A DNA stretch of 64,000 nucleotides from Setoptus koraiensis (Eukaryota > Animalia > Arthropoda), in the NCBI GenBank assembly GCA_048013815.1, contig CM106586.1:17732001-17796000 (forward strand), read 5' to 3'. The translations under genes and the position numbers were made by a program. The notes beneath the pieces are model-generated. The model was not told where the DNA came from and ran no database searches. It saw only the letters and a list, made by a program, of their open reading frames with translations. Shown here one piece after another: positions 18,939-46,205 of this stretch (its first letter is position 1; every line of letters begins with the position of its first letter).

Positions 18939-23395
<4,457 letters not shown>

Positions 23396-30300: not shown

Positions 30301-31354
30301 TAGACTTTCAGGATTCCAAGCCTGCTTGATTTTGAATCGATTTTTGCCGATGATATTTGTAGATGCTATGAAAGATTCCACTCGGGATGCGGTAAACTTA
30401 TTCGACAACAATCAAGAAAATCCTGAACTCATGTGGAATAGCTCTATTAGAGATCACGTATGTAAAAATACCTGCCGTCTCGCTCAAGAGATCTACGACT
30501 CACAGATGCAGGATCCCGCCTACTCCTGGCAAGTTCCCGATGATTTTAATCTAATTCAGTCCTCCAACAAAGACGAGATCATAGTAGCTGGTGTCTATCT
30601 AAGACTTTTTAATCAAAATCCTGGTTGGGTTCTTAGGAAACCCAAAGAGTTTTTGACCGAGCTGATGAATAGATTCCAAACCCTCATCAAAACGCCAACA
30701 TTCGAGTCTAGCGAAATGGAAGTAGTCAGTACGGCTTTAAAAAACCTCTTAGTCGCTCAACCTTCTCTACTGGATTTCATACCTGCAATGGGGCATATCC
30801 ACAGCATCATAAGTGCCATCTACTCTAAGAGCAATCGCGATGAAAATATATCCACTTCCTGTCTAGCAATCATAAGTGAAATGTGTAGTTCTCGCTCATG
30901 TGTTGACAATATGAGTTCGCACGATTCATTGCTGACTGAAATTAGGGGGGCGACTACCGCCTATCCAGACACCATAGGCATTGCTATTTACGCACTCAGA
31001 AAAATGTACGAATTTGCATCACTGAACGATCGTATAGTCCAACAGGCATTGGAATCAGATTTCATTACATTCCTACTAAAATTGTTAGAGTCGAACCAGT
31101 CGGCACAAACACGAGCACTCATAGTCAAAACTCTCAAATCAATGACCACAAACTATATATATGGACAACAAGTAGAGACAATATTGAGCAAATCCAAAAT
31201 ATGGGTGGACTACAGCGATCAGCGTCACGACCTTTTTATTTCAAATGAACCTTCAATTGCAGCTATTCAAGGACCATCGGCTAATGTGGCAGGTTATCTG
31301 ACCGGCACCACGCGAGATGGACCTGCTGAACCCCCTCCGATAAACAAGTATTAA
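24326..31354 (+). CDS. DNAJC13: RME-8 / DnaJ homolog subfamily C member 13, single exon, 2342 aa
   Basis: N-terminus 'FIVVKHSWKGRYTRVLSIG', IWN-repeat-like segments ('LIWNLRTREEL', 'AIWNGEMR', 'LIWNNATRAEL'), GYF_2-like 'GPYTFLDIEEFWKSGKINQSTKLWAQGMDGW', J-domain 'YFKLAKKYHPDKNPEGR'. Confidence 0.96.
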   Translation: MDNQQNRYISSFIVVKHSWKGRYTRVLSIGTSQLCTFDPKNLRPTNCWLYNEVVDVAPLLRDNPNNLPPTMTTGVSELFKLVVFKKKSNSTEVLKFSSDHRSDILCDLLQFRSRFASTSISKSVNQTRCRTVQYECRKFHWSRHEIPIYLQLTSNSINQIDHSGYFISPFYYKDIEQIDHVANIPGAFVIVTSGFGRLHMFRVLSKANQESANKQLINIAESTSSELDTCKQDLINTLIDYAYNNCGVVINVKKDPIETEQFAMKKFGSRYSDDEAMTSLHEFTVYKISNRHQHRPVRRILCLTNLCLVERDPETYQAVTVKPLSEIFALIRSSEDPQLFMIEFSFRGLILSYTTTERDSLMASLVDSVRAFGNIDVHVKMTPTNRGWRCGPLNMPVDDEIERCHLKAFQTLPLGWSFMDAVYRFNANCPYSGLTHTVPQDTKLFSENKAKLIELALMSFVDQSEGGCIAMDEGATSGPVKPSDIEQLFQAIRRLVASKAGFALFNQSDRFRSYLGRSIVQTIKLNNDAITHAGIDTLCALMQPMHLDCDIRHEQLNKSSLLASKPFLESLMEVLRLHINRGTGALVVASMLDFLTFALCAPYSETTESGCFDNLLNMVAIHGRDIFKLFQHPSLAIVKGAGLVIKAIIEEGEQNVSKRMQELALAEGALIKHLQIGLFSQCSNGRTLGVQFLSRHLVGLWSTGNEETQALFRRIFPLGLLNYLDSTEAPPQKMCGLTSRDNLKLATQSSMGQVNVVTNKLNAIRDIHPSVRVVERQIESAIVHWREQIGIPKRDEKTPVRPVVLRRRRERVKVATNWDMFYYQFFQDHSKPDLIWNLRTREELKNVIENELRLFKTDRELASNQALISWNYHEFEVTYQSLMDEVKIGDYFLRLLLEDSENLMNKIQIRSPFHFLSDLYHRFLLSKRIDMRCICLQAMAIVYGSYLTEIGQFSDVKFIVSMLKDCQHRLERDRLLLLIEKLILQKDNAKDFIDANGVRVIVDMITLAHLHTQRAFVPTQTNVIEASSEMLAAAASKEWFYSDDEELSASEHPNEESESETNDKKKHNGPYTFLDIEEFWKSGKINQSTKLWAQGMDGWRLVADIPQLKWKLLAVGDSVMNGSELAICMLNILIKLCEYYPSYDLDGAIIRPFPKVKKYLSDSTCLPHIVQLLLTFDPVIVERVANLMTMVSEENPILSQLYRSGIFFFILMYTGSNLIPIGRLLHLIHLTQAFRFEDNSNQKPRSFLSYLLPEAMVCYLENYGPEKFAQIFLGEFDTPEAIWNGEMRRTMIERIACHVADFTCRLQSNNRATYEYCPIAPINYAPLENELFVNIYYLRNLCNTEKFPKWPIRNPVNLLKSLLDAWKEEADRKPSSFSIEDALRVLELDPTKYEHPEDLDENTIRVSYFKLAKKYHPDKNPEGRHKFEEINKSYEYLSSKQAREKAAGLNPKNMILIFKAQSILFGQCNDELHPYKYSGYPMLIKTIKSEIEDDRLFSKPDPLLAYACETAYYTFRCSNKNAEELRREGGLETLQQALSRCASVLSASSQPDDVCVQMCTHIVNCFTVAAEFEACQQKLGEMTGIIRDLNRILYYGQLLQLCLAASECLAAFASCAPLHEQIYQSGVLFSLMLFLFKYDYTLEEGGVDRNEGHNKQELTNQLAKTSLRACAQLNEKCPKLFKSPTESLLTVYLAKLMTVKDSELHEILKTLNSNVEIPYLIWNNATRAELIDYLGSQQREIVRSGECPDTSYGTDFVFSSHKDELFVGDVFIRVYNQQPSYPLVNASQFVQSLLNYIGTKAQYIHSALSLSDEKLSNTSFENVQDCLQALSLAIKFNAGIEAKCIGHFKLLFSLLKINQLPSVQDTALNVIQNITGNHDCVADVANSEVIVYLLMVLYSSRSIPSNITPTASPTKQQSSHIQEQRSQANNNEPVNRTMIVLDTLLPLMSNAKLVKEAIMKGGLVYLIDLFCNSTDSSIRVKSAELISRITYDRLSGFQACLILNRFLPMIFVDAMKDSTRDAVNLFDNNQENPELMWNSSIRDHVCKNTCRLAQEIYDSQMQDPAYSWQVPDDFNLIQSSNKDEIIVAGVYLRLFNQNPGWVLRKPKEFLTELMNRFQTLIKTPTFESSEMEVVSTALKNLLVAQPSLLDFIPAMGHIHSIISAIYSKSNRDENISTSCLAIISEMCSSRSCVDNMSSHDSLLTEIRGATTAYPDTIGIAIYALRKMYEFASLNDRIVQQALESDFITFLLKLLESNQSAQTRALIVKTLKSMTTNYIYGQQVETILSKSKIWVDYSDQRHDLFISNEPSIAAIQGPSANVAGYLTGTTRDGPAEPPPINKY

Positions 31355-31379: not shown

Positions 31380-31928
31380 TTATTGTCTGTTGCCTCCGAG
31401 TGCTCCCTCGCGTGCCAACCTATCAGCGGCCTCATTTCCCGGATTTTTGCTGTGCCCGGCAACTTTCTCAAATGTTACATTAATACCATCCATTGAGCTT
31501 TTCAGATGTAAAAAATCTTGCTTGTTTATGACTTCTTTATTTTGTGAGTTGATGTACCCGTTTCTTTCCCAATTGGGCATCCATTTCTCCACGGAATCCT
31601 TAAGAAATTGGCTGTCGGTTTTCACAGTGACTGAGCTGTAACCCTCATTTTTTGCTTGTTGTATGCCTCGTGAAGCAGCTTGTATCTCAGCGCGATTATT
31701 AGTTGCCCGACCTGACAACCTTTCGCCGACGTTATTGGGATGACCCTCGCCCCAATAAACGCCGATACCTGCCGATGTGGCTCCTTGTCCGTTCTTTGGG
31801 CAAGAACCGTCGGTGTATATTGTTGCGTGTCTGTTTCTATTCATTCTGTTGAAGTTTGAGCTACCTCTTTTGATGACTGGCAAAGTAGTGTGTAGGGCGG
31901 ATTTGAGACTGAAGTTTGCTTGCTGCAT
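31380..31928 (-). CDS. RNASEH1: Ribonuclease H1 (catalytic domain only)
   Basis: 'IYTDGSC..NG....AGIGVYWG', 'TNNRAEIQAA', 'VKTDSQF...WMPNWERNG', 'VAGHS..PGNEAADRLAREGA'; all D-E-D-H-D catalytic residues present. Confidence 0.92.
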   Translation of the reverse strand: MQQANFSLKSALHTTLPVIKRGSSNFNRMNRNRHATIYTDGSCPKNGQGATSAGIGVYWGEGHPNNVGERLSGRATNNRAEIQAASRGIQQAKNEGYSSVTVKTDSQFLKDSVEKWMPNWERNGYINSQNKEVINKQDFLHLKSSMDGINVTFEKVAGHSKNPGNEAADRLAREGALGGNRQ

Positions 31929-32272: not shown

Positions 32273-33325
32273 ATGAGTCAAGCATCACATTCCAGGAATA
32301 ATGACCGGGCATCTGGAAATAAAGACTTCAGTGCCGATGTCGCCAACCATTATAACAGTATAGAACAAACTTCAACTAGGGACAGGAGACAATCTCGAAT
32401 AATTGATTTGAGAAATTTCAACAATGCAACAAAAGACTATCTTCTTACTAAAACATTCGTGATGCTCCAGTCTAAATTTGAATCAACTCAATTCAAAGTT
32501 TTAGACATGTGCTGTGGTAAAGGAGGGGATCTTCTGAAGTACATTAATAAAAATGTAGGTTACCTCTTAGGAGCAGACATAGCCGACGTTTCGATCGAAC
32601 AAGCCAAGGGACGCTACGAGAACGCAAAGGGCAGAATGAAGTTTACTTCAGATTTTATTGTTTCGGATCTCACAAAAGACAATCTGAGAGAAAAAGTGGA
32701 AAAGGTTCTAAAGGACAAATCCACACTATTTCATATTGCCTCGGCTCAGTTCTGCATCCATTACAGCTACGAATCTATGGAACAGGCTGTGCAATTTATC
32801 AAAAATGCTCATAGTAATTTAGAACGTTTTGGTTTTATCGTTGGCACATATCCTGATGGACCTAAGCTCCACAAACTAGCCAGCATCAATAATGGAGTTT
32901 ATGAGGTGGAAGATCGTTTAAAAGTTGAGTTTAAGCAAGTGAAACTGAAACCAAAAGCATTTGGAACCAAGTATCATTTCTTCTTGGAGGGCGTAGTGGA
33001 CTGTCCAGAATTTGTTGTTCATCCAGATGTAATGAGATTACTTTTTGAAAAAAACGGTTTCATGTTTGTATATGACTACTCATTTGCGGAGTTTGTTCAA
33101 AATGAAAAAGATAAGATTAAAGATACCTATAGGAAATTTAGCCACTCATTGAAGAAAGTTCATAGAAAGGAGGTCGGTTCGAATCCTGAATACGAGCATC
33201 TCAGTGAATATTTGCAAAAAATGCCCAAAGATGAAGACGGCCGAAGTTCAGGTTTCGGTACATTGCCGAAGAGCACTTGGAACATCGCCTCCGTATACAG
33301 AGTTTTTTGTTATAGGAAGATATAG
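32273..33325 (+). CDS. RNMT: mRNA cap guanine-N7 methyltransferase
   Basis: 'VANHYNS...RRQSRIIDLRNFNN', SAM motif 'VLDMCCGKGGDLLKY', 'FCIHYSYES', 'FGTKYHFFLEGVVDCPEFVV'. AATAAA at 33340-33345. Confidence 0.95.
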   Translation: MSQASHSRNNDRASGNKDFSADVANHYNSIEQTSTRDRRQSRIIDLRNFNNATKDYLLTKTFVMLQSKFESTQFKVLDMCCGKGGDLLKYINKNVGYLLGADIADVSIEQAKGRYENAKGRMKFTSDFIVSDLTKDNLREKVEKVLKDKSTLFHIASAQFCIHYSYESMEQAVQFIKNAHSNLERFGFIVGTYPDGPKLHKLASINNGVYEVEDRLKVEFKQVKLKPKAFGTKYHFFLEGVVDCPEFVVHPDVMRLLFEKNGFMFVYDYSFAEFVQNEKDKIKDTYRKFSHSLKKVHRKEVGSNPEYEHLSEYLQKMPKDEDGRSSGFGTLPKSTWNIASVYRVFCYRKI

Positions 33326-33451: not shown

Positions 33452-34201
33452 TGTAGAGATCGCGGACAGTGGAAGCGTGTTTAGTATGTGACTGGGTAGA
33501 TGGCGTGAGGTCTGCTGATGTGAGATCGAGTAAGGTAAGGTATGCTGATGTGAGGTCGAGTACGGTAAGGCCAGTTGTGGTGAGGTCGAGTACGGTAAGG
33601 CCGGTTGTGGTGAGGTCGAGTACGGTAAAGCCGGTTGTGGTGAGGTCGAGTACGGTAAAGCCGGTTGTGGTGAGGTCGAGTACGGTAAAGCCGGTTGTGG
33701 TGAGGTCGAGCAAGGTAAGGCCTGTTTTGGTGAGGCTGCTGGAGGTAAGGCCTGTTTTGGTGAGGCCGCTGGAGGTAAGGCCTGTTTTGGTGAGGCTGCT
33801 GGAGGTAAGGCCTGTTTTGGTGAGGCTGCTGGAGGTAAGGCCTGTTTTGGTGAGGCCGCTGGAGGTAAGGCCTGTTTTGGTGAGGCCGCTGGAGGTAAGG
33901 CCTGTTTTGGTGAGGCCGAGGAAGGTAAGGCCTGTTGACGAGTGATGGGTTAGGGATTCGGTATGTAAGAGTTTATAATAGTACTTTATTGGTGACCTAC
34001 GATATAATGACAATGAAACAATAAAATCGGGTTGTATTTATACTAATTGCCCTGATGCTCCCTCTGACGGGAGAGGTTTACAACTGGTGGCGACTACTGG
34101 TGGCGACACTTGGTGGCGACACTTGGTGGCGACAGCTGGTGGCGACAATCTATTGCACCGCATGGATGTAATGTCTGTGCATGCGGGTTCGGATCATCAC
34201 A
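33452..34201 (-). repeat. 3' LTR (750 bp, TG...CA)
   Basis: Direct repeat of 39390-40019. Contains 14 x 30-bp units (33511-33930) and 5 x 13-bp units (34083-34147). Confidence 0.92.
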
Positions 34202-34203
34202 GT

Positions 34204-34216
34204 CCACCCTCTTTTT
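34204..34216 (-). other. Polypurine tract AAAAAGAGGGTGG
   Basis: Purine run on the element strand, 2 nt before the TG of the 3' LTR. Confidence 0.85.
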
Positions 34217-34219
34217 GGG

Positions 34220-35745
34220 TTAGGGGTTAAATCTTCCTGGCCTCTTAAGGGTTGTTCTCTCCCTAAGAGTTCTGGTGGGCCCTGGTGGTGGCTGTATTAT
34301 GATAGGTGGTGGTATGATAGGATCCGGCGGTTGTGGTTCCTCTGCAGGTGTATGGTCCTCCTCTGCTGGACGTAGTGTTACGTCGTTCCCGGGACTAAGT
34401 TCGATCATGGTTTCGTTATCACTTTGGGCGGAATGGAAGGACTCGTCCGCTGAATCGTAGGATTCGGGAATGCAAGATGGCCTTGGGGTCGATCCTTGGT
34501 TCGCGGCGAATGAGAACGCGTCTGATGGCATCTCGAGGTTGTCTTCGGGCTCCTCTTCTCTATCGTGCCGGGCATATAACCAATCCCTGTGGCCGTCCAC
34601 GGTGAGGACTTGGGGGTCGTTGTGTGAGATGATTGGAGGTGTGATTATCGGTAACGGTTGTTTTCGGCGAGTACCTGCTGTTGTGGGGATGTGATTTCGG
34701 GTATTCGTTCCTGTGGATCCATCCAAGTCAATGACTTGGCGTTGATGGAGAACGCTGGGATTTGTGGTTGTTCCATAAGTTGGGAAGTTTGGTACCGAAT
34801 CTGGGTCGGTCTGTATACTTGATATCGGTTCGTTGTGATCAGGGACTCGGCCTGTAGGTGCTGGGACCTGGTTTGTCGGTGCTGGGACCTTGTTTGTTGG
34901 TGCTGGGACCTGGTTTTCAGGGACTTGGCCTGATTGCGCTAGGGCTTGGCTAGCTTCGTTGTCATGGGTTGACTGATGATAGGTGTCTGAGGCTGGGTCA
35001 GACTGTGCTAGGACTGGGCTAGCTTCGTCGATAGGAGAGTCGTCGTAGAATTCTGAGACTGGGTCAGATTGTGAGGGACGAGCAGTTCCTGTTCCCGTTC
35101 TTGGTGCTTGAGGATTGTCCTCGGAGAGTTGCGCCAGAGTTTGCGCTATGTTTTGATTGTTGGATCCTTCCCTGAGTCTGTAGGGTTTTATGTCTTGTAA
35201 GGAGACGGACTTATTTCTGAGGTTTCTTAAGTCTAATACTATAGCGAATCTAGGTTCGCCTTCTGGTTCAGTTGGTAGTTTGAGGATGATCGCGGGACCA
35301 TCCCACTTGTAAGAAAATTTGGATACCTCGTCCTGGCGGACGGTATGTTGTTTGAGAAGGACCGGTTGACCCACGTGGAACTTGGCACGAGGATGGTCAC
35401 GATCGTGGAATCGTTTCTGGGTTTCTTTGGCCTTCTTGTTGTGGAAGACTATGTCTCGCCGTATTATTTGTCGGGATTCAGAGCTGTGAAGAGGATTGGA
35501 GGGTACGAGGTTTAATGGCGTCCTAGGTCTGTACCCGAACATGACCTCGTGGGGTGAGTATTTGAGGGATTCCTGAAAGGTGGTATTGTATACGAACAGA
35601 GCCCAACGGAGGTGTTCGTCCCAACGGTGTTGGTGCTGGTTGACATAGTTTCGTAGGATTTTCACAAGGGATCCGTTGAACCTCTCATCCATCCCGTTCG
35701 CCCTTGGATGGTATGGGGTAGTGAACTGGTTGGTGATTCTCTGTG
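34220..35745 (-). pseudogene. Integrase C-terminal fragment (third catalytic Glu, GPY/F-like region, long P/S/T tail), out of frame with pol
   Basis: 'FTTPYHPRANGMDERFNGSL...WDEHL..ALFVYNTT...YSPHEVMFGYRPR' and 'YKWDGP'. No HHCC zinc domain or first two Asp motifs. The left junction position is approximate. Confidence 0.85.
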
Positions 35746-38342
35746 GGATCGCTGGTGTCATGGTATACCTGTTGCATGAAGTATAAGGCATCGTCTCTTA
35801 TCTCGAACTGTTCCAAGGAATCGATGTCTTCGATTATCTTGAGCAGATCCGGGTCTTTTCCTTGTTCTTCCAACGATATACGTTTAAATGCAAGGAGCTT
35901 CTGGACTCGAGGGCAGAGGACGGACTTAGCCATCTTGTCCGCTTCTTCATTCCCGGGGTCATTGCAATGTCCTTTTGTGTATACCCAATCTATGGTGAGA
36001 TTCTGTTTGGCTCTTGCTAGTTCCAGGATAAGGGATTCGTTTGTCAGGGCTTTGTTCCTATTGTTCTTAAATCCTGCTGTGGTCCATCTGTCGAGCCATG
36101 TGGTTACCGCGTTTATCACGTACTTGCTATCTGATACAATAGTGATTGTTTTCCATTTCTGTTCGTTCGCGATGCGGCAGGCTTGTATAGCGGCGGTCAT
36201 CTCTCCGGTCTGGTTCGAAGGATTGTTCTTGACCTCTCCTTTACAGGAGAGCGAAGGGAACTTGGGAATGTGAACAGCCCAACTAGCACGACATGTGGGT
36301 TTTCCGTTGTGGTAAGAGGCCCCATCTATGTAGAGGACTGCTTCGGGTGGCGTTTTCCCGAGCAGGGACTGCTGTATTTGCTGTGTAGGTACGGGTTCAA
36401 CCACTTTGAATTTGGGGGAGACGTTGGGAGGTAGGTGTAGCATTAAGTTCTCGACCCTCTTGGGCTTATGTTTGAGGTTGAATGCTTTCTGTAGTTCCCT
36501 GGACTGGGTGACGAAGGTGGTCTTCGTTTCGGATAGAATAGGCCCGAACTTGTCGTATGCTAGGACCAGTGCAAGGAGGTTCTTCTCTACATTGGTGTAG
36601 TTGAGCTCTGATGCCGACAATGTCTTGCTGGCTCGTTCGAGGAGGTTGTTGTCCCCGTCGTAGCAGGCCACGTCGATTGATGCCTCGAGGGTATGGATGT
36701 GGACTTCCTTGTCTGATTCCTTGATCGGGATTTGCTGAGGTTTGGCTCCCTTTAGGATGGATTTGATGGTGTCGAGTGCTTGTTGATGGATTTCGGTCCA
36801 TTTAAATTGCTCATCCTTGGAGAGTAGAAGGTTAAGGGGATGAGTGAGTTCCGAGTACCTTGGAATGAAGCGGGCGTAGTAGACTAGGCTACCTAGTAGG
36901 GACCTGACCTCGTGGCGTGATTGTGGAGTATTGTTGGAGTTGAGAAAATCCAGGTGCTCGGGAATCGGTTGCATACCTTCACTGCTGACCTTCTTGCCCA
37001 AGAAGTCTATTTGGGTTTGGAAGAAATGACATTTTGAGGGGTTGATTTTGAGGTTGTATTGTCTGGCACGAATCAGGACCCACTTGAGGTTCGAGTTGTG
37101 TTCTTCTGGTGTCCTGCCGAATACCAGTATATCGTCGATGTACACTAGGCATCGTTCCCCTATTCCGCCTGCGAATATGGTATTCATGATTCTCTGGAAT
37201 ATGGCTGGGGAGTTAGTGAACCCGAAGGGTAAGCACTTATACTGCCAAAGCCCTGTGGGACTTGCAAAGGCGAAGAACTTCCTGGTTTTTGGTTGGAGTT
37301 TAACCTGATGGAATCCTTCTGTGGCGTCCAGCGAACTGAAGTACTTAGCTCCTTGGATGTGCAGCATCATGTCATTGAGGTTTGGTAAGGGATACTGGTC
37401 CCTTACGGTGGCTTGGTTAAGAGGGATGTAATTTACGACGAGTCTTCTCTTGCCATTCTTCTTGGCTACTGTTCTGCAATTTGCTAGGTATGGTGACTGC
37501 GAGGGCTCGATTATTCCGTTCTCTAGGAGCCTCGTTACTTGATCTTCGACCTGCTTTGCGTCTTCGAGGCTATGACGTTTTACCTTCGCGGATATGGGCC
37601 GGTAGTGTTGCAGGTTGATGTCTGGGAGTGGAAGTCGGATGTAGGAACCTCTAAGTTCGTCCGCGAAAACATCTTTGAAAGTATCCTTGAGGCACGCGAT
37701 TTCGTTGTTTGGGTTCGGGAACTGATTAGAGGAGCGGACTGTGATGTATGGTTTCCCTGGTTGAGGGGTATTTATTAAACGTTCTTTCGGAGTAGTACAA
37801 AGGTTTGGTAACTCGGTTGAGGCTGCGAGTGTTTCCTTCTGTGATGTTGAATGGTTTGTGTTCATTCCCGTGCCGGGTTTTGTTCCTGAGGATAGGGCCC
37901 AATTTACTTTAGCTGGTAAGGAATCGAACGATAGGGATCCTTTGAGTTTGTAAAGTAGTGATATCCCTACGACTAGGTCGCATCCTAGTACCTTGGAAGT
38001 GAGGTCGTTGAGTATGAGGAACTCCTCCATTATTGGGACTTGGTTGCTGTTTAGAGGTTTGATGAGTAGTTTGGTGGACTTGGAGATATGTATGGCGTGA
38101 TCTGCGGTTTGAGCTACGATGTTCACAGGTTTTAGGACGTTCTCGATCTCTCTCAGGATTCTGCCTTGACCCGGGATGAATGATGTTGTTGCTCCGCAGT
38201 CAATGACTCCTTTGAGAGGTATTCCTTGTATGAGAAAGGTTTCGGTGATAAGATCTTTGTGAACATCATCAAGGCACGATATGATGTGCTTTGTGGGTTT
38301 GGCCGAATTGCCTTGTAGATTCAGCGACCCCTGAAGTTTAAA
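35685..38342 (-). CDS. pol: pol: aspartic protease, reverse transcriptase, degenerate RNase H (tether), second intact RNase H
   Basis: ORF 35685..38399, entered by -1 frameshift at 38342-38336. Motifs DCG, YIDD, tether 'RASKTLSASELNYTNVEKNLLALV', then RNase H 'LYIDGAS...GEMTAA...VSDSKY...KGH...GNEEADKMA'. Confidence 0.92.
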   Translation of the reverse strand, partial: FKLQGSLNLQGNSAKPTKHIISCLDDVHKDLITETFLIQGIPLKGVIDCGATTSFIPGQGRILREIENVLKPVNIVAQTADHAIHISKSTKLLIKPLNSNQVPIMEEFLILNDLTSKVLGCDLVVGISLLYKLKGSLSFDSLPAKVNWALSSGTKPGTGMNTNHSTSQKETLAASTELPNLCTTPKERLINTPQPGKPYITVRSSNQFPNPNNEIACLKDTFKDVFADELRGSYIRLPLPDINLQHYRPISAKVKRHSLEDAKQVEDQVTRLLENGIIEPSQSPYLANCRTVAKKNGKRRLVVNYIPLNQATVRDQYPLPNLNDMMLHIQGAKYFSSLDATEGFHQVKLQPKTRKFFAFASPTGLWQYKCLPFGFTNSPAIFQRIMNTIFAGGIGERCLVYIDDILVFGRTPEEHNSNLKWVLIRARQYNLKINPSKCHFFQTQIDFLGKKVSSEGMQPIPEHLDFLNSNNTPQSRHEVRSLLGSLVYYARFIPRYSELTHPLNLLLSKDEQFKWTEIHQQALDTIKSILKGAKPQQIPIKESDKEVHIHTLEASIDVACYDGDNNLLERASKTLSASELNYTNVEKNLLALVLAYDKFGPILSETKTTFVTQSRELQKAFNLKHKPKRVENLMLHLPPNVSPKFKVVEPVPTQQIQQSLLGKTPPEAVLYIDGASYHNGKPTCRASWAVHIPKFPSLSCKGEVKNNPSNQTGEMTAAIQACRIANEQKWKTITIVSDSKYVINAVTTWLDRWTTAGFKNNRNKALTNESLILELARAKQNLTIDWVYTKGHCNDPGNEEADKMAKSVLCPRVQKLLAFKRISLEEQGKDPDLLKIIEDIDSLEQFEIRDDALYFMQQVYHDTSDPTENHQPVHYPIPSKGERDG

Positions 38343-39316
38343 CGGTTTGGCCGGCTGGGGCAGTCTGCGTTCCAGTGGTCCCCTTCGCAGTAATAACATG
38401 GTGTTGGTGGCGGACGGTTTGCTCGAGCAGGTGCGCGTTCCTCGTTTCTATAGTTCTGGCGGAATGGGACTCGGGAGTTTCCTTGGTTTAGCGCTGCCGC
38501 TGCGGGTCCTTTATTGTAGGAACTAGGTTGTTCCTTCTCGTCCTCATTTGTTGCTCGTACTGTTTGCTTCTTGAAGGCTGCGAGTATTTCCTCGTTTTGC
38601 TTCTCCTGTTTGGCAACTAGATCTTTAACCACACTTGACATAAGTTCCTTGAATTGGTTTACGTCGAGCCCATGGGACGTTTTCGGGTCCGGGACTTCGG
38701 GTTCTTGGTCGTAACGTCTGGTCAATTTCCTTAATGCTTCAACGGTTGTGACTTCCTTGAGGTCAGTCATCTGATTGATTTTGTGTCTTATGGCAGGACT
38801 GAGGCTTCTGACTATGGCTCGGACTGTTTCTGGTTCGTCCGCGCGGGGATAGGCTTTCTTGTATGTGTAAGAGTAATCGTCGAGGTATAGCGAGAGTGTT
38901 CCATATTTTTGTTGGTCGTAGGTCAGCTCGGTGAGCTTCTTGAATGATCGATCCTCCTGACTCTCTCCCGAGAATTGCTCGAGGATGAGTTTCTTGATGT
39001 CCTTCCAAGGCAAGTGTAGCTTGGGCCTGAGTGTTCCTTTAAACCACGCCCTTGCGGGATTGAGAAATGCTTTGTTGAGCAGTGCGGTCTTTTGATCATC
39101 TGGAAAGCTGCTTGTGAGTTGTTCCCATTTCTCGAGCCATTCGTGTATATTCTCATGTGGGGTGCCGGAAAATTGCGGAGGAGTGATGTGTAGCATAGCT
39201 GATGATAATGTCGCCGATGCCAATTGGCTGGTCACCTGAGTGAGGGACTCGGAAATTAGGGTCGTGAGTTCGGCTGCGTTCATTGTGATATTAGCTTGAG
39301 ATTCTTCGTTGGCCAT
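38321..39316 (-). CDS. gag: gag (capsid plus CCHC nucleocapsid), 331 aa
   Basis: 'PPQFSGTPHENIHEWL' capsid start and zinc knuckle 'CYYCEGDHWNADC'; begins about 50 nt after the PBS. Confidence 0.9.
   Translation of the reverse strand: MANEESQANITMNAAELTTLISESLTQVTSQLASATLSSAMLHITPPQFSGTPHENIHEWLEKWEQLTSSFPDDQKTALLNKAFLNPARAWFKGTLRPKLHLPWKDIKKLILEQFSGESQEDRSFKKLTELTYDQQKYGTLSLYLDDYSYTYKKAYPRADEPETVRAIVRSLSPAIRHKINQMTDLKEVTTVEALRKLTRRYDQEPEVPDPKTSHGLDVNQFKELMSSVVKDLVAKQEKQNEEILAAFKKQTVRATNEDEKEQPSSYNKGPAAAALNQGNSRVPFRQNYRNEERAPARANRPPPTPCYYCEGDHWNADCPSRPNRLNFRGR
38336..38342 (-). promoter_or_regulatory. -1 ribosomal frameshift slippery heptamer T TTA AAC
   Basis: X XXY YYZ in the gag frame (CGT TTA AAC), 4 codons before the gag stop. 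A -1 slip gives FKLQGSLNLQG, the pol frame. Confidence 0.85.
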
Positions 39317-39369
39317 GGTGATATCGTTGGGATTCGGGTGACTTAGGAGGATTGACGGACTGATGTTCT

Positions 39370-39387
39370 AACCACGCTCTGCTACCA
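39370..39387 (-). other. Primer-binding site TGGTAGCAGAGCGTGGTT (initiator tRNA-Met)
   Basis: 18 nt, 2 nt inside the 5' LTR boundary, complementary to the ...CTCTGCTACCA 3' end of animal tRNAi-Met. Confidence 0.9.
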
Positions 39388-39389
39388 AC

Positions 39390-40019
39390 TTTAGAGATCG
39401 CGGACAGTGGAAGCGTGTTTAGTATGTGACTGGGTAGATGGCGTGAGGTCTGCTGGTGTGAGATCGAGGAAGGTAAGGTCTGCTGATGTGAGGTCGAGTA
39501 AGGTAAAGCTGGTTGTGGTGAGGTCGAGTAAGGTAAGGCCTGTGGTGGTGAGGTCGCGTAAGGTAAGGCCTGTGGTGGTGAGGTCGAGTAAGGTAAAGAT
39601 GGTTGTGGTGAGGTCGAGCAAGGTAAGGCCTGTTTTGGTGAGGCCGCTGGAGGTAAGGCCTGTTTTGGTGAGGCCGAGGAAGGTAAGGCCTGTTTTGGTG
39701 AGGCCGAGGAAGGTAAGGCCTGTTTTGGTGAGGCCGAGGAAGGTAAGGCCTGTTGACGAGTGATGGGTTAGGGATTCTGTATGTAAGAGTTTATAATAGT
39801 ACTTTATTGGTGACCTACGATGTAATGACAATGAAACAATAAAATCGGGTTGTATTTATACTAATTGCCCTGATGCTCCCTCTGACGGGAGAGGTTTACA
39901 ACTGGTGGCGACAACTAGTGGCGACACTTGGTGGCGACACTTGGTGGCGACAACTGGTGGCGACAATCTATTGCACCGCATGGATGTAATGTCTGTGCAT
40001 GCGGGTTCGGATCATCACA
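39390..40019 (-). repeat. 5' LTR (630 bp)
   Basis: On the element strand: 5 x 13-bp U3 repeats (39901-39965), TATAAATA (39860-39853), AATAAA (39808-39803), then 10 x 30-bp units (39449-39748). It ends ...CTAAA rather than ...CTACA. Confidence 0.92.
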
Positions 40020-40094: not shown

Positions 40095-40432
40095 TAGTGA
40101 TGGGGGGAGATCTCCCGTCGTGGGTGAAAATCTCCCGCCCATGGGAGATTTCTCCCCGGGAGATCTCACGTCTCCCGCTTCTCCCGTCTCTCCCAAATCT
40201 CCCGGATTTCTCCCGTTTCTCTCGTGTGCGTTTTCAAAGGTATGTTGCGAACGAAGAGGCGCCCCTGGCGGAGAAGAACATACCTTCGAAAACGCAAACG
40301 GGAGAAACGGGAGAAATCCGGGAGATTCGGGAGATTTGGGAGAAACGGGAGACGCGGGAGCTCCAGGGGAAGAATCTCTCGGGGAGAAATCTCCCGTCTC
40401 CCGGGGCGGTAGATCGATCCCCCCCACCACTA
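40095..40432. mobile_element. Non-autonomous hAT-type MITE, 338 bp
   Basis: 14-bp TIRs TAGTG(A/G)TGGGGGGA, 8-bp TSD GGCATAAC / GGCATGAC (7 of 8 match), many subterminal TCTCCC motifs on the left arm mirrored by GGGAGA on the right arm. Confidence 0.85.
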
Positions 40433-40501: not shown

Positions 40502-42559
40502 ATGAAAGCCATTAGATTGTTGCGTAAATCCAATTATAGAATACAGTTGAATAGCAATCAAATATTAAATAAATCAACGAGTACTATCAATTATATAATG
40601 ACTTCGAATAATCAAGGCGAGGAACTTCTGTTGCCAATTGAGGGTAAACGTAACATATTAATTACAAGTGCTTTGCCATACGTTAATAATGTGCCCCATT
40701 TAGGTAATATTGTTGGCAGTGTTTTGAGCGGGGACGTCTTCGCGAGATATTGCCGATTGAGGGACTATCAGACCCTGTATGTCTCAGGAACAGATGAATA
40801 TGGAACAGCGACAGAGATCAAAGCAATAGAGGAAAAATGTACACCGCAACAAATTTGCGATAAATATCACAAATTGCATGCTGAAATCTACGAATGGTTC
40901 AATATTAAGTTTGATCAATTCGGACGCACAACAACACCGGAACAAACAGAAATAGTTCACGAAATCTTCCAAAATTTGTACGATAATAACTATTTCAAAG
41001 AACAATCTATTAAACAATTGTATTGCGAACAATGTTTTCGTTTCTTAGCCGACCGTTTTGTTGAAGGTATTTGTCCACATTGCTCATACGATGACGCAAG
41101 AGGCGATCAATGCGATAAGTGTGGCAAGTTAATTGATGCGCCTGATTTGAAAGAACCTAAATGCAAATTATGTAAGAATCAACCTGTTATGAAAGAGTCC
41201 AAGCACTTGTTCTTTGATTTACCTCAACTACAGGAACGTTTAAAAATATGGTACGATAATATCAATGAAAGATCTGCTCCACCAGCCCGTCCATTACAAG
41301 AACTACAGTCAACTCAAGGTGATTCGTCGGTCAAGGAGATTGGATCCGACCAGAAAATAGTTACTGAAAGTAACGATGCTCCTCGCCATAGATTAAGCCC
41401 GTCTGACACACATTGGACACAGCAAGCAAAATCGATAACGGAAACGTGGCATAAAGCTGAGCTTAGAGCCAGATGCGTTACTCGCGATCTGAAATGGGGA
41501 ACCAAGGTACCATTGCCAGGGTACGATGACAAAGTCTTCTATGTGTGGTTCGATGCACCAATTGGCTATTTATCCATAACAGCATGTCGTACTAATAAAA
41601 CTGATTGGAAATTGTGGTGGAACAATCCAGATCTTGTGGAAACTTACCAGTTTCTTGGTAAAGATAATGTAACTTTCCACTCAATCATGTTTCCAGCAAT
41701 TCAATTGGCTACGGGTCAGCCATGGTCCATGGTAAATCATCTTATAGCTACGGATTATCTCAACTACGAGAATGAAAAATTTAGTAAATCAAGGGGCACT
41801 GGTGTATTTGGAACAGATGTCAAATTTACAGAGGACAAGATACCGGCTGACATTTGGCGTTTCTACTTGATGTTTATCAGGCCGGAGACAGGAGATTCGT
41901 CTTTCTGTTGGCTGGAATTCCAAAGCAGAGTGAACTTTGAGCTTCTCAATAATTTGGGTAATTTCATTAATAGGACACTGAAATTTGTTGATACAAATTT
42001 TGATCGAAAGTTGGGCCATTATGAGCCTAGTGAAGATGACAAGAAGTACCTACAAGATCTAAATCAACTTGTTATTGACTACATTGAGCGAATGGAACGA
42101 GTTCAATTACGTGACTCTCTTAAGATCATACTATCTATTAGTAGGTTAGGTAATCAGATGATGCAGGCCAACACACCTTGGGTTCTTGTGAAGGGGACCG
42201 ATGAAGACAAGTTACGAGCGCAAAGCGTGTTGTATTTGGCTGCAAACACTGTGGCTATCATTTCACTTCTATTGTCGCCATACATGCCCAAAATTAGCGA
42301 AGAAATAAGATCGCAGTTATGCCTAGATTCAGATAAATTAGTTGATGTGGAAGGTCTCGAATTGCTATTGCCAATCGGACACAGAATTGGAACTCCGAAA
42401 ATACTGTTCAACAGGGTGGAAACAGATTTTGTGAAGGAAATGCAAGCGAAGTTCTCATCGGCGAAACCAGATACAGTGACCGCGCAACCCGCCGGTCAAT
42501 CCGGAAAGAAAAAGAACAAACCCCCAAAAAAGAACAAAGACGAAGGAGTGAAATCATAG
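40502..42559 (+). CDS. MARS1: Methionyl-tRNA synthetase, cytosolic type (second in-frame ATG at 40598)
   Basis: 'RNILITSALPYVNNVPHLGNIVGSVLSGDVFARY', zinc knuckles 'CPHCSYDDARGDQCDKCGK', 'VFYVWFDAPIGYLSIT', 'KFSKSRGTGVFG'. Confidence 0.96.
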   Translation: MKAIRLLRKSNYRIQLNSNQILNKSTSTINYIMTSNNQGEELLLPIEGKRNILITSALPYVNNVPHLGNIVGSVLSGDVFARYCRLRDYQTLYVSGTDEYGTATEIKAIEEKCTPQQICDKYHKLHAEIYEWFNIKFDQFGRTTTPEQTEIVHEIFQNLYDNNYFKEQSIKQLYCEQCFRFLADRFVEGICPHCSYDDARGDQCDKCGKLIDAPDLKEPKCKLCKNQPVMKESKHLFFDLPQLQERLKIWYDNINERSAPPARPLQELQSTQGDSSVKEIGSDQKIVTESNDAPRHRLSPSDTHWTQQAKSITETWHKAELRARCVTRDLKWGTKVPLPGYDDKVFYVWFDAPIGYLSITACRTNKTDWKLWWNNPDLVETYQFLGKDNVTFHSIMFPAIQLATGQPWSMVNHLIATDYLNYENEKFSKSRGTGVFGTDVKFTEDKIPADIWRFYLMFIRPETGDSSFCWLEFQSRVNFELLNNLGNFINRTLKFVDTNFDRKLGHYEPSEDDKKYLQDLNQLVIDYIERMERVQLRDSLKIILSISRLGNQMMQANTPWVLVKGTDEDKLRAQSVLYLAANTVAIISLLLSPYMPKISEEIRSQLCLDSDKLVDVEGLELLLPIGHRIGTPKILFNRVETDFVKEMQAKFSSAKPDTVTAQPAGQSGKKKNKPPKKNKDEGVKS

Positions 42560-43817: not shown

Positions 43818-46205
43818 ATGAAGCATGACATTTCGGAATTATCATCAATATTCAACAACCTCGTTGTAGACGACACATCAGGATAAGAATACACATCTTC
43901 AAATTGCACTATACAGAATAATATCACATTACTGCTATTGATATAAGGATGACATTCTCAATATTCACTCAAGGAACATAATTCATCTCAATCAGTGTAA
44001 TCTGTTACTTGGAAGGATACCTATTATGCAAGGTTAAACGACTTGGAAATTGCACAACCTATTGTGATATTATGGTACAGCGGGCCATATTTATACATCT
44101 TTGCTACTTAAATATTCATTATTAACGAATCACTTCTAATCAGCTTCACATATGTATACATATCTCGTGTATACTATATGTGAAGGCTGAAGTGATAATG
44201 ATAATAATGAGTGAAAAAATATTAAATTATTAATCAAATTAGCGGAGTGAATTATAAATAAATTCTAAAAAATTATATTGAAAGATATTAGATAGAGTAT
44301 TAAATAATTAAAATCATAGATGGATTATTGCTATTTATTGAATTGAAATATTTCCTATATATATAAATATATTAAATATAATTTATTATATGAAATAATA
44401 ATATATATATATATTTTATATATTGATTATATTAATATATATATTATGTAGATAAACTGAGATAAAATAAATGCTGATATAATATAAATAAAAATAATTA
44501 TATAAATTCGGGAAGTGAAATTTATTATAAACTTTAATTAGCAAAATGATTATTATAAATATTAATGAATTATTAAAATATGTTCATATAGCAATATAAA
44601 ATTAAATAAATATATTATATGAAAAAACTTTAAACAATGATTTTGATATAAATCACTAATGAAATTTATAATCATATTCAATATTTATTAATATACATTA
44701 TGATTGAAATTATACGCTTGATTAAATTTTGAATAAATACTAAATTATAAAAATTACTTATCTATATTATAATTATTAAGGTGAAAAATAATAACTGATA
44801 TATTAAAAATTATAATGAAAAATATTAATGACTTAATTAATATATGATAAAATCTGATTATATAATAAATGTAATTATGCAATATAGATTTAATGATATA
44901 TATATAATTATTAAGATATGATAAACATATTATAACAATATAACATATTTATGATAATGATATAAAATTAAATATAGAAATAAAAATATATTCAAATTAA
45001 TTTTGAGATTCTGAATTATTCAAGAGATGCTTAATGGGAGGTGGAAGTCGAACTAATAATATAATATGAAATGCTATATTATAAATTATTATAAAATATA
45101 TGAAAATATTATGAAAATTCGAAATTATCATATATCTGTTGTGAATATTAGATAGCTGTTTAATATAAATTCATAATATAAATATATCATAGTATTAATC
45201 TATACATCTATATAATAAAATTAATTATATAAATTAAAAATATTGACAGTAAAATATTATTGAATTAGTGATTATTAAAATACATAAAAATTATTCAGGA
45301 GTGCGAATTAACTATAAATAAAATAATATGTTAAATAAATATAAAATATATATTAATGATAGGAATATTAATTACAAACTGATAATTAAATAAATATAAT
45401 ATAAATTATATAGATATTGGAGTAAATTTTTGATTATAAAAAATATTACATATAGACAAAACAATAAATATTATGAAATGTGATGTAATTTTAAATGAAA
45501 TAAATTAATAGAAGTGTTTGATAGGTTATTTAAAATATTATGAATATTGAATACAAAATAATATAAAACAATTATAAAATTAATTTGATTACATATTTTC
45601 GGATATAACAAAATAATATACTGAAAATATAATATAAATTAAAAATTATTACTATTTATATATCTAAATTGATATTGATATTCAATTTATTATAATTGAT
45701 CAGAATCTTAAATATTCTGAATAATGAGTAATTCGAGCGTGGCAACGCTCGATGTGGAAGTCCTATTGAAATATTATAATTTATAATATATAATATTATA
45801 AAAAAATTAAATAATAAATAAATAAAAATATATTAAAAAAATATATTAATATTTATTATTAATAATATTATATTATTAAAAAAAAAAATTTAAAATGATA
45901 ATTAAAATTAAATATTAAATATTTTTAAAAAAAGAATAAATTAATATAAATGAAAAAAATAAAAATATAATATAAAAATATTTAAAAATATTATTAATTT
46001 TTATTATTATATAATTAAAAATATTATAAAAAATATAAAAATATTAAATAATAAAAAAAATAATATTATATAATTTAAATTATTATTTAAAATTATAAAA
46101 TTTAAAAAATAATAAATTTTAAATAAATTTTTAAAATTTATAAATATATATATAATTTAAATAAAAAAATAAAATTTATTAATTTTAAATAAAAAAAAAA
46201 TAATA
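43818..46205. other. Block of progressively increasing AT content ending in a nearly pure A/T tail at a contig end
   Basis: Composition falls visibly from ordinary host-like sequence to almost no G/C after about 45772; all frames inspected contain stops. Origin unknown. Confidence 0.8.

What the first reader, a model, noticed from the sequence alone, without database searches (positions are those of the whole stretch)
35916..36710. Ty3/Gypsy element with a retrovirus-like dual RNase H: dead native RNH tether plus an intact eukaryote-type RNase H1
Seen: after RT, pol has a typical Ty3/Gypsy RNase H fold ('RASKTLSASELNYTNVEKNLLALVLAYDKF', about 36710-36400) whose catalytic TDAS motif reads 'HTLEAS'. 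A second RNase H follows (36344-35916) with all D-E-D-H-D residues and the cellular RNase H1 basic-protrusion pattern 'WLDRWTTAGFKNNRNKALTN'. It aligns almost gap-free with the host RNase H1 at 31380-31928 ('WMPNWERNGYINSQNKEVIN'; 'KGHCNDPGNEEADKMAK' vs 'AGHSKNPGNEAADRLAR'). Established: tether plus acquired RNase H is the architecture of vertebrate retroviruses and, with an archaeal-type RNH, of plant Tat and oomycete Chronos/Archon elements; ordinary arthropod Ty3/Gypsy elements have a single RNH. Inference: this may be an independent capture of a fungal/metazoan-type RNase H1 by an arthropod LTR lineage, or a relative of the retroviral stem. I cannot tell whether the lineage is already described.
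Basis: partly seen in the sequence, partly recalled or inferred. Interest (0 to 1): 0.88.

Follow-up and report, generated by a model that had tools for sequence, protein, structure and literature searches.

The report
Gypsy retrotransposon with double RNase H
A defective Ty3/Gypsy retrotransposon in a mite-like genome carries, as retroviruses do, a dead copy of its own RNase H followed by an intact cell-type RNase H, and it belongs to a sizeable family built the same way that I could not find described.

Summary
One LTR retrotransposon lies on the minus strand at 33452-40019. Its pol encodes protease, RT, a Ty3/Gypsy-type RNase H fold (RNH1) and then a second RNase H (RNH2, Pfam PF00075, E 4e-26).

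- **RNH2:** it keeps D-E-D-H-D. It aligns without gaps to the human RNase H1 catalytic domain and to the neighbouring host RNase H1, at only 25% identity.
- **RNH1:** it has none of the four acidic residues that 56 of 57 single-RNH relatives keep. Of 69 dual-RNH relatives, none keeps more than two.
- **Not a one-copy accident:** 62 RNH2-bearing proteins form an RT clade (200/200 NJ bootstraps) with none of 57 long RNH2-lacking relatives inside.
- **Second lineage:** a separate dual-RNH lineage includes a velvet-mite protein.
- **Not retrovirus-like in RT:** the RT scores like an ordinary Ty3/Gypsy RT.
- **Host:** its MetRS is closest to those of eriophyoid mites.

The papers I searched list dual-RNH lineages only in retroviruses, lokiretroviruses, Odin, Tat, Chronos and Archon.

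Verdict: a real, probably undescribed, convergent case of a known architecture. This copy is defective in its integrase. The donor of RNH2 and the host range are unresolved.

The parts
33452..40019 (-). whole LTR retrotransposon (6568 bp)
   Evidence: LTR pair found by blastn and MAFFT; ends read. No other copy or solo LTR in the window. No target-site duplication seen by eye.
39390..40019 (-). 5' LTR (630 bp), holding a 30-nt tandem array
   Evidence: Array of 10.0 copies.
33452..34201 (-). 3' LTR (750 bp), holding a longer 30-nt tandem array
   Evidence: Array of 14.4 copies. Outside the arrays the two LTRs are identical at 326 of 333 positions.
39368..39387 (-). primer-binding-site-like stretch starting TGG, 2 nt after the 5' LTR
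   Evidence: Read directly. The tRNA it matches was not tested; ARAGORN found no tRNA gene in the window.
34202..34216 (-). purine-rich tract directly upstream of the 3' LTR (polypurine-tract-like)
   Evidence: Read directly in alignment A1.
38321..39316 (-). gag, a 331-codon ORF with a CX2CX4HX4C knuckle near its end; no breaks
   Evidence: ORF and translation; weak Retrotrans_gag match, E 0.0094.
34220..38399 (-). pol as one part: protease, RT, RNH1, RNH2 and an integrase remnant. Broken in the integrase portion only: 1 deletion and 1 change of reading frame, with no stop inside the PR-RT-RNH1-RNH2 portion.
   Evidence: About 170 residues are absent that in relatives hold Integrase_H2C2 and most of rve. 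Pfam finds only a sub-threshold rve_3 match (20 bits, cut-off 26.5), whereas 6 of 6 scanned relatives have both integrase domains.
36993..37466 (-). reverse transcriptase domain (pol residues 312-469), YIDD motif at residue 420
   Evidence: Pfam RVT_1 6e-35; motif. Best solved relative is Ty3 RT, 4ol8, E 2.7e-51.
36360..36800 (-). RNH1: native Ty3/Gypsy RNase H fold (pol residues 534-680) with all four acidic catalytic positions replaced (H569, N607, Q632, Q676)
   Evidence: Pfam RT_RNaseH_2/RT_RNaseH. Predicted as a complete five-strand RNase H fold, pLDDT mostly above 90. Catalytic columns.
35922..36341 (-). RNH2: cellular (fungi/metazoa) type RNase H1 catalytic domain (pol residues 687-826) with D692, E733, D757, H811, D821
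   Evidence: Pfam PF00075 4e-26. Human RNase H1 2qk9, 7e-18, gap-free over 138 residues. Foldseek TM 0.86-0.90 (normalised to the target chain), rmsd 1.5-1.6 A over 140 residues. Catalytic columns.
31380..31928 (-). neighbour, not part of the element: host RNase H1 gene used as comparator
   Evidence: Pfam RNase_H 1e-34; 25% identical to RNH2.

Best explanation
This is a Ty3/Gypsy (Metaviridae-type) LTR retrotransposon of a lineage that long ago placed a cellular fungi/metazoa-type RNase H1 catalytic domain between its own RNase H and its integrase.

**Shown**
- The domain order is PR-RT-RNH1-RNH2-IN.
- RNH2 keeps the full D-E-D-H-D set and the basic protrusion across the lineage.
- RNH1 keeps its fold but has lost its acidic catalytic residues across the lineage.
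- RNH2-bearing elements form their own RT clade.

**Inferred**
- RNH2 does all the RNase H work of reverse transcription: template RNA removal, polypurine primer generation and primer removal.
- RNH1 survives as a structural spacer, like the retroviral connection or tether domain, holding RNH2 at a set distance from the polymerase site.
- The capture was independent of the one in retroviruses. It did not come recently from this host's own RNase H1 gene.

The copy in the window cannot act on its own, because its integrase portion is broken (1 deletion, 1 frame change).
For: - **Architecture in this copy:**
- **Same architecture in relatives:** 6 of 6 long relatives scanned by Pfam have it. So do 43 of 154 stored proteins by local phmmer. 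In the RT-region search, 48 of the 51 best rows carry PF00075; the 3 without it are fragments of 531-601 aa. None of the next 69 rows carries it.
- **RT tree:** 138 sequences, 226 columns. 62 RNH2-bearing proteins plus 2 short fragments form a clade in 200/200 bootstraps, with 0 of 57 long RNH2-lacking proteins inside.
- **RNH2 catalytic columns, main lineage:** D 70/70, E 69/69, D 69/69, H 65/66, D 66/66.
- **RNH1 catalytic columns:** 56 of 57 single-RNH relatives keep four invariant acidic columns. Of 69 dual-RNH relatives, 47 keep none, 21 keep one and 1 keeps two. The window keeps none.
- **Conservation:** RNH2 is better conserved than RNH1 in the lineage, mean pairwise identity 0.50 against 0.39.
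- **Structure:** the AlphaFold2 model of both domains has pLDDT 94 and pTM 0.81, with two complete RNase H folds. Foldseek aligns the pair over 304-342 columns to foamy virus, HIV-1 and MoMLV RT chains. It aligns RNH2 alone to human RNase H1 at rmsd about 1.5 A.
- **Not a duplication:** RNH1 and RNH2 share no detectable similarity, E 0.28.
- **Not a recent host capture:**
Against: - No enzymatic or expression evidence exists here; the division of labour is inferred from residues and folds.
- The trees are neighbour-joining on 137 and 226 columns, with no likelihood method available.
- I could not compare directly with retroviral, lokiretroviral or Odin sequences, so independence from them rests on indirect score comparisons.
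- A Glu two residues before the catalytic Glu column is kept in 76 of 76 relatives. RNH1 is therefore still under some constraint whose nature is unknown.
- The window copy is itself defective.
- The source organisms of all but one relative are unknown.
Confidence: 0.8

Rival explanations
1. The element shares its dual RNase H by descent with retroviruses, lokiretroviruses and Odin. It would be a surviving branch of the retroviral stem, not an independent capture.
For: - The order tether-like RNH then His-type (fungi/metazoa-like) RNH is the same as in retroviruses and Odin (PMC10508981 passages; PMC9040795 parts 1-2).
- The best Foldseek matches of the two-domain model are retroviral RT chains.
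Against: - The RT+RNH1 part scores Ty3 178, foamy 78 and MLV-type 51 bits. An ordinary single-RNH relative gives 291/118/97, the same proportions.
- RNH2 scores human RNase H1 at 68 bits, E. coli RNase HI at 39-48 bits, and unmodified retroviral chains at 28 bits or less.
- RNH1 is a complete fold. The retroviral connection is described as a partial fold (PMC13524379 passage).
- A screen of 3,624 animal genomes, including 1,710 protostomes, for retrovirus-like RTs found only sea-anemone Odin (PMC9040795 part 1).
- No env is present. The last ORF ends 18 bases before the 3' LTR.
Confidence: 0.07
2. RNH2 was taken from the RNase H domain of a non-LTR retrotransposon, not directly from a cellular RNase H1 gene. 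The mechanism afterwards would be the same.
For: - One of the 59 non-pol RNH2-like proteins without a hybrid-binding domain also carries an Exo_endo_phos endonuclease domain, P0131.
- The RNH2 tree does not resolve a donor.
- RNH2 has no hybrid-binding domain, as expected for a retroelement-borne RNH.
Against: - 38 of the 97 non-pol library proteins in the RNH2 tree set carry the RNase H1 hybrid-binding domain.
- 0 of the 59 others carry RVT_1.
- The closest named ones are RNase H1 of sea urchins, sea cucumbers, brittle stars, snakes and turtles.
- Only the best 150 of 8982 hits were seen, so non-LTR domains may sit lower in the list.
Confidence: 0.12
3. RNH2 is peculiar to this copy: a nested fragment, a local duplication of RNH1 or an assembly artefact.
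For: This copy is damaged elsewhere, in its integrase portion, so rearrangement is conceivable.
Against: - RNH2 lies in frame in one uninterrupted reading frame with RT and RNH1.
- The same order and spacing occur in dozens of independent contigs.
- RNH1 and RNH2 are not similar, E 0.28.
- They match different Pfam families.
Confidence: 0.01

Closest known systems
Retroviridae, lokiretroviruses and Odin retrotransposons (tether plus acquired fungi/metazoa-like RNase H)
   Same: Order RT, degenerate native RNH, then an acquired His-type RNH with a full catalytic set. The two-domain model aligns to foamy virus, HIV-1 and MoMLV RT chains. Like Odin, it has no env.
   Different: The RT scores as an ordinary Ty3/Gypsy RT. 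RNH2 is much closer to cellular RNase H1 than to solved retroviral RNase H. RNH1 keeps a complete fold. The host is a mite, not a vertebrate or sea anemone. No direct sequence comparison was possible.
Tat (plants), Chronos and Archon (oomycetes) Ty3/Gypsy elements with an additional archaeal-type RNH
   Same: They are true Ty3/Gypsy lineages in which an extra cellular-type RNH was added and the native RNH lost its catalytic residues (PMC4408406 abstract and section 5; PMC5348765 passages; PMC10508981 passages).
   Different: Their added RNH is the archaeal type, marked by Arg at the position where fungi/metazoa-type RNH has His (PMC5348765 passage). Here it is His in the window and in 65 of 66 plus 6 of 6 relatives. 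Their hosts are plants and oomycetes.
Insect errantiviruses with RNase H plus a C-terminal pseudo-RNase H (PMC13524379, passages read)
   Same: They are arthropod Ty3/Gypsy elements with two RNase H-like folds between RT and integrase.
   Different: There the first copy is the canonical one and the second is a rearranged pseudo-domain. Here the first is dead and the second is a cellular-type enzyme domain. Errantiviruses carry env and this element does not.
Ty3 of yeast (PDB 4ol8, 7q5b)
   Same: It is the best solved relative of the RT+RNH1 part, E 2.7e-51. It has the same PR-RT-RNH-IN plan.
   Different: Ty3 has a single RNase H domain. 56 of the 57 single-RNH relatives examined here keep all four acidic catalytic columns, whereas this element's RNH1 keeps none and it adds RNH2.
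Eukaryotic cellular RNase H1 (human 2qk9; host gene at 31380-31928)
   Same: RNH2 matches the catalytic domain end to end without gaps, with D-E-D-H-D and the basic protrusion.
   Different: RNH2 has no hybrid-binding domain. It is embedded in pol and is only 25-30% identical.

Membership tests
Ty3/Gypsy (Metaviridae-type) LTR retrotransposon | two long terminal repeats flanking gag and pol | tested here: met
   LTRs at 39390-40019 and 33452-34201; gag and pol lie between them.
Ty3/Gypsy (Metaviridae-type) LTR retrotransposon | pol order protease-RT-RNase H-integrase, with the RT nearest to Ty3-type RTs | tested here: met
   Pfam order. Best PDB match is Ty3 4ol8, 2.7e-51. The integrase is only a remnant in this copy but complete in 6 of 6 relatives.
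Ty3/Gypsy (Metaviridae-type) LTR retrotransposon | target-site duplication at the ends | tested here: inconclusive
   No matching 4-6 nt flanks seen by eye.
Dual RNase H architecture (tether plus acquired RNH) | an RNase H-like fold of the native type between RT and a second RNase H | tested here: met
   Pfam RT_RNaseH(_2) at 534-656, then PF00075 at 687-826; two folds in the model.
Dual RNase H architecture (tether plus acquired RNH) | native RNH has lost its catalytic residues while the acquired RNH keeps them, across the lineage | tested here: met
   (counts in the text).
Retroviridae / lokiretroviruses / Odin clade | RT groups with retroviral RTs rather than with ordinary Ty3/Gypsy | tested here: not met
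   Indirect test only. Score proportions to Ty3, foamy and MLV RT equal those of an ordinary single-RNH relative. No joint tree could be made.
Retroviridae / lokiretroviruses / Odin clade | acquired RNH groups with retroviral or Odin RNH | tested here: inconclusive
   Solved unmodified retroviral RNH chains score 28 bits or less, against 68 bits for human RNase H1.
Retroviridae | env gene | tested here: not met
   No ORF room between pol and the 3' LTR.
Tat / Chronos / Archon (archaeal-type additional RNH) | added RNH of archaeal type, with Arg at the semi-conserved active-site position | tested here: not met
   His in the window (H811) and in 65 of 66 plus 6 of 6 relatives. Criterion taken from a PMC5348765 passage.
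Insect errantivirus bridge region | canonical RNase H followed by a C-terminal pseudo-RNase H, plus env | tested here: not met
   The order of live and dead domains is reversed and there is no env. Description from PMC13524379 passages.
Eukaryotic RNase H1 | type 1 catalytic domain with D-E-D-H-D and the basic protrusion | tested here: met
Eukaryotic RNase H1 | N-terminal hybrid-binding domain (Pfam Cauli_VI), free-standing gene | tested here: not met
   No Cauli_VI match in pol. 0 of 43 pol-embedded proteins matched the hybrid-binding domain.

The most novel reading that the evidence does not exclude
Two separate Ty3/Gypsy lineages, both with a member in acariform mites, each captured a metazoan-type RNase H1 on its own and then let the native RNase H decay. 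That would add two further independent origins of the retroviral RT-tether-RNase H design. They would be the first in animal Metaviridae outside the retroviral stem, and the first true Ty3/Gypsy lineages to use the fungi/metazoa-type rather than the archaeal-type enzyme.

Support: the two lineages are apart in both trees.
- **RT tree:** the lineages get 200/200 and 181/200 bootstraps. RT identity between them is 0.35, no higher than to RNH2-lacking elements at 0.37.
- **RNH2 tree:** they join in only 6/200 bootstraps. The second lineage is closer to cellular RNase H1 (0.39) than to the first lineage (0.36).
Probability: 0.4. Interest if true: 0.78.

Novelty: new variant of a known kind. Interest (0 to 1): 0.66.

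Why it matters
Replacing a retroelement's own RNase H with a cellular one, and keeping the old domain as a spacer, is treated as a hallmark step on the way to retroviruses. Each independent recurrence found so far (Tat, Chronos/Archon, Odin) has been used to argue that the design is selected for and is not a historical accident.

An animal Ty3/Gypsy lineage, possibly two, would add a natural replicate. It has the same design, an RT that is not retrovirus-like, and a metazoan-type enzyme. With many sequences in hand, one could ask by comparison alone:
- which parts of the dead domain stay constrained;
- how linker length and RNH2 features co-vary;
- whether the design correlates with copy number or host range.

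It also warns annotators that a PF00075 hit next to an RT in an arthropod genome need not signal a retrovirus.

Tried and rejected
**Readings tried and dropped**

1. *Recent capture from the adjacent host RNase H1 gene.* Rejected. Identity is 25%. The host protein ranks 98th of 101 in mean distance to the pol-borne set.
2. *Local duplication of RNH1.* Rejected.
3. *Other copies or solo LTRs in the window.* None found by blastn of the element or tblastn of its protein segments. The only outside hit is the host RNase H1.
4. *My first catalytic-column assignment for RNH1 was partly wrong.* The Glu I called 'site 2' (E605, kept in 76 of 76 relatives) lies two residues before the column that is Glu in 57 of 57 single-RNH relatives, where the window has N607. 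My 'site 1' column (E572) is also not the column that MAFFT pairs with the invariant Asp (H569). I use the counts.
5. *Naming the source organisms of relatives.* Of 20 pol relatives looked up, 18 come only from Logan, 1 from JGI/IMG and 1 from NCBI (RWS01320.1, Dinothrombium tinctorium).
6. *The word-index search with the RNH2 region* found only 4 proteins. The exhaustive representative search was far richer.
7. *ARAGORN* found no tRNA in the window, so the primer tRNA was not identified.
8. *A skewed-composition stretch at 18-20 kb* looked like a possible second element. It is a Gln/His-rich ORF.
9. *Not done.*
   - I ran no scan of genome contigs, which holds bacteria and archaea only.
   - I ran no metagenome scan, because that cap is zero.
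   - I built no likelihood trees, because no such program was on hand.
   - I made no comparison with Odin, lokiretroviral or retroviral sequences.
   - tables S1-S3 of PMC9040795;
   - supplementary files 3-5 of PMC13524379;
   - the supplements of PMC4408406 and PMC5348765.

Repbase and Dfam could not be consulted.

**Literature searches behind 'not found in print'**
- PMC9040795: passages and parts 1-2 of 4.
- PMC4408406: outline, abstract and section 5.
- PMC10508981, PMC5348765, PMC13524379 and PMC12440569: found passages only.
- All other papers: search listing only.


Full report
**What is there.**
The window carries one LTR retrotransposon on the minus strand, 33452-40019. Its LTRs are 630 and 750 bp long. 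They differ mainly in the copy number of an internal 30-nt tandem array, 10.0 against 14.4 copies. Outside the arrays the LTRs are identical at 326 of 333 positions.

A TGG-initiated primer-binding-like stretch follows the 5' LTR after 2 nt. A purine-rich tract abuts the 3' LTR. I saw no target-site duplication.

gag (38321-39316) is an unbroken 331-codon ORF with a CX2CX4HX4C knuckle. pol (34220-38399) overlaps gag in another frame. Relatives' pol proteins likewise begin at the protease, so I count that as the family's normal layout and not as a break.

**State of this copy.**
pol is broken only in its integrase portion, by 1 deletion and 1 change of reading frame. No stop interrupts the protease-RT-RNH1-RNH2 portion. 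About 170 residues have no counterpart here; in relatives they hold Integrase_H2C2 and most of rve. Pfam sees only a sub-threshold rve_3 match.

The protease motif reads D-C-G where 14 of 16 relatives have D-T-G. The RT has YIDD. There is no room for an env gene. No second copy or solo LTR lies in the window.

**The observation.**
Pfam places the domains as follows:

| Domain | pol residues | E-value |
|---|---|---|
| RVT_1 | 312-469 | 6e-35 |
| RT_RNaseH_2 / RT_RNaseH | 534-656 | 2e-09 / 5e-09 |
| RNase_H PF00075 | 687-826 | 4e-26 |

The host ORF at 31380-31928 is also PF00075, E 1e-34. RNH2 aligns to it over 139 residues without a gap, at 25% identity.

**What RNH2 is.**
The best solved relatives are the human RNase H1 catalytic domain, and then E. 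coli RNase HI.
- Human RNase H1: 8swb and 2qk9, 6e-18 and 7e-18, 138 residues with no gaps.
- E. coli RNase HI: about 1e-11 to 1e-9.
- Unmodified retroviral RNase H chains: far behind, 1e-5 and weaker.
- The two HIV entries near 1e-8 are engineered chains; one is named as carrying the E. coli loop.

RNH2 has D692, E733, D757, H811 and D821. His at the fourth position marks the fungi/metazoa type as opposed to the archaeal type, which has Arg (criterion from a passage of PMC5348765).

The AlphaFold2 model of pol residues 525-835 was built with 59 relatives. It has pLDDT 94 and pTM 0.81. Foldseek superposes RNH2 on human RNase H1 at TM 0.86-0.90 (normalised to the target chain) and rmsd 1.5-1.6 A over 140 residues.

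**What RNH1 is.**
The RT+RNH1 part is closest to Ty3 RT/RNase H (4ol8, 2.7e-51). In the model RNH1 is a complete RNase H fold with five strands and the flanking helices.

I aligned the region with 57 RNH2-lacking relatives and 69 RNH2-bearing ones. The single-RNH set has four near-invariant acidic columns: D 57/57, E 57/57, D 57/57 and D 56/57. 56 of the 57 keep all four. The window has H569, N607, Q632 and Q676 there.

Among the 69 dual-RNH relatives, 47 keep none, 21 keep one and 1 keeps two. HMMER's pairwise alignment to Ty3 instead pairs the first Asp with E572. Either way there is no Asp.

RNH1 and RNH2 show no mutual similarity, E 0.28.

**It is a family, not an accident.**
An exhaustive HMMER search of 1.84 billion representatives with RNH2 gave 8982 hits at E of 1e-3 or better, and 13 at 1e-30 or better. 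The best hits, 42-60% identical, sit at about residues 560-820 of proteins of 1300-1600 aa.
- All 6 of 6 that I scanned have RVT_1, RT_RNaseH(_2), RNase_H, Integrase_H2C2 and rve in that order.
- By local phmmer, 43 of 154 stored proteins have RNH2 colinear with RT, RNH1 or integrase.
- A search with the RT+RNH1 region listed 120 rows. 48 of the first 51 (E of 1e-82 or better) carry PF00075, and the 3 without it are fragments of 531-601 aa. None of the remaining 69 (E of 2e-68 or weaker) carries it.
- In an RT neighbour-joining tree of 138 sequences, 62 RNH2-bearing proteins plus 2 fragments form a clade in 200/200 bootstraps. 0 of 57 long RNH2-lacking proteins fall inside.
- Within this main lineage the RNH2 catalytic columns read D 70/70, E 69/69, D 69/69, H 65/66 and D 66/66.
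- RNH2 is better conserved than RNH1, mean pairwise identity 0.50 against 0.39.

**A second lineage.**
Six RNH2-bearing proteins form their own RT clade (181/200). They are no closer to the main lineage than RNH2-lacking elements are, RT identity 0.35 against 0.37.

In the RNH2 tree they are seven, counting a fragment without an RT match. They also stand apart:
- the main clade gets 171/200 and 169/200 in two runs;
- the second lineage gets 47/200;
- the two lineages join in 6/200.

RNH2 identity is 0.36 between the lineages, 0.34 from the main lineage to cellular RNase H1, and 0.39 from the second lineage to cellular RNase H1.

One member, P0138, is NCBI RWS01320.1 from the velvet mite Dinothrombium tinctorium. 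It has the full domain order. Its lineage also lacks the RNH1 acidic residues: 0/5, 4/5, 0/5 and 2/5 across the four columns.

**Where RNH2 came from.**
The source is not resolved. Of the 97 non-pol library proteins in the RNH2 tree set, 38 carry the RNase H1 hybrid-binding domain. The other 59 are RNase_H-only proteins apart from one with an endonuclease domain, and none has RVT_1.

The closest named ones are RNase H1 of echinoderms and reptiles. The host's own RNase H1 ranks 98th of 101.

**Relation to retroviruses.**
Foldseek's best matches for the two-domain model are foamy virus, HIV-1 and MoMLV RT chains, over 304-342 columns at high rmsd. The likeness in layout is therefore real.

The RT is not retrovirus-like. 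Its scores to Ty3, foamy and MLV-type RT are 178, 78 and 51 bits. An ordinary single-RNH relative, P0214, gives 291, 118 and 97 bits.

I could not place Odin, lokiretroviral or retroviral sequences in a tree.

**Host.**
The neighbouring genes are long uninterrupted ORFs. The MetRS at 40502-42559 is 87% identical to an unnamed Logan protein. It is 61-63% identical to those of the eriophyoid mites Aceria tosichella and Fragariocoptes setiger. Other acariform mites come next.

**Literature.**
The papers I could search name these dual-RNH lineages:
- Retroviridae, lokiretroviruses and Odin, with fungi/metazoa-like RNH;
- Tat, Chronos and Archon, with archaeal-like RNH.

Sources: PMC10508981 and PMC12440569 (passages), PMC9040795 (parts 1-2), PMC4408406 (abstract and section 5).

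Insect errantiviruses are reported to have RNase H followed by a pseudo-RNase H (PMC13524379 passages). That text has no occurrence of 'mite'.

Nine searches found no description of an arthropod Ty3/Gypsy lineage with a fungi/metazoa-type second RNH. Closed supplements, Repbase and Dfam could still hold one.

**Mechanism.**
Shown:
- the domain order;
- the live and dead residue pattern;
- the folds;
- conservation across the lineage.

Inferred:
- RNH2 carries out RNase H cleavage during reverse transcription.
- RNH1 acts as a spacer like the retroviral connection domain.
- The basic protrusion of RNH2 adds hybrid binding.

**Verdict.**
This is a new variant of a known kind, of clear interest to retroelement evolution. 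It is limited by the unknown host range, the unresolved donor and the lack of a direct comparison with Odin and retroviruses.

Noticed in passing
window 40143-40395: An imperfect palindrome (arms 40145-40246 and 40277-40378, 102 nt, 86% complementary) built of 9-nt arrays. It lies between the element's 5' LTR and the MetRS start codon at 40502. Its nature is unknown.
   Followed up: partly
window 33508-33938 and 39456-39755: Both LTRs hold a 30-nt tandem array with different copy numbers, 14.4 against 10.0. This creates spurious long ORFs on both strands.
   Followed up: partly
window 31380-31928 (-): The host RNase H1 ORF has the catalytic domain only. There is no hybrid-binding domain in the ORF, although 38 of the 97 non-pol library RNH hits have one. 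I did not look for an upstream exon.
   Followed up: no
window 24326-31354 (+), 32273-33325 (+), 40502-42559 (+): Host genes are long uninterrupted ORFs of 2342, 350 and 685 aa, packed tightly. This suggests an intron-poor, compact genome. The nearest named MetRS are from eriophyoid mites.
   Followed up: partly
window about 44300-46200: A very AT-rich simple-repeat tract; GC is 0.148 over 44001-46000.
   Followed up: partly
window 18939-19895 (-): A 318-aa Gln/His-rich low-complexity ORF. It explains the strong GC and AT skew there, which at first looked like a second element.
   Followed up: yes
proteins P0004, P0010, P0021, P0037, P0061, P0072, P0063: Some cellular-type hits carry two or three tandem RNase H domains, or up to four hybrid-binding domains, in one protein. 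They are unrelated to the element but unusual.
   Followed up: no
window 34853-34916 (-), inside the C-terminal part of pol: A 21-nt tandem repeat (3 copies) encodes a Pro-rich repeat in the long tail after the integrase remnant.
   Followed up: no
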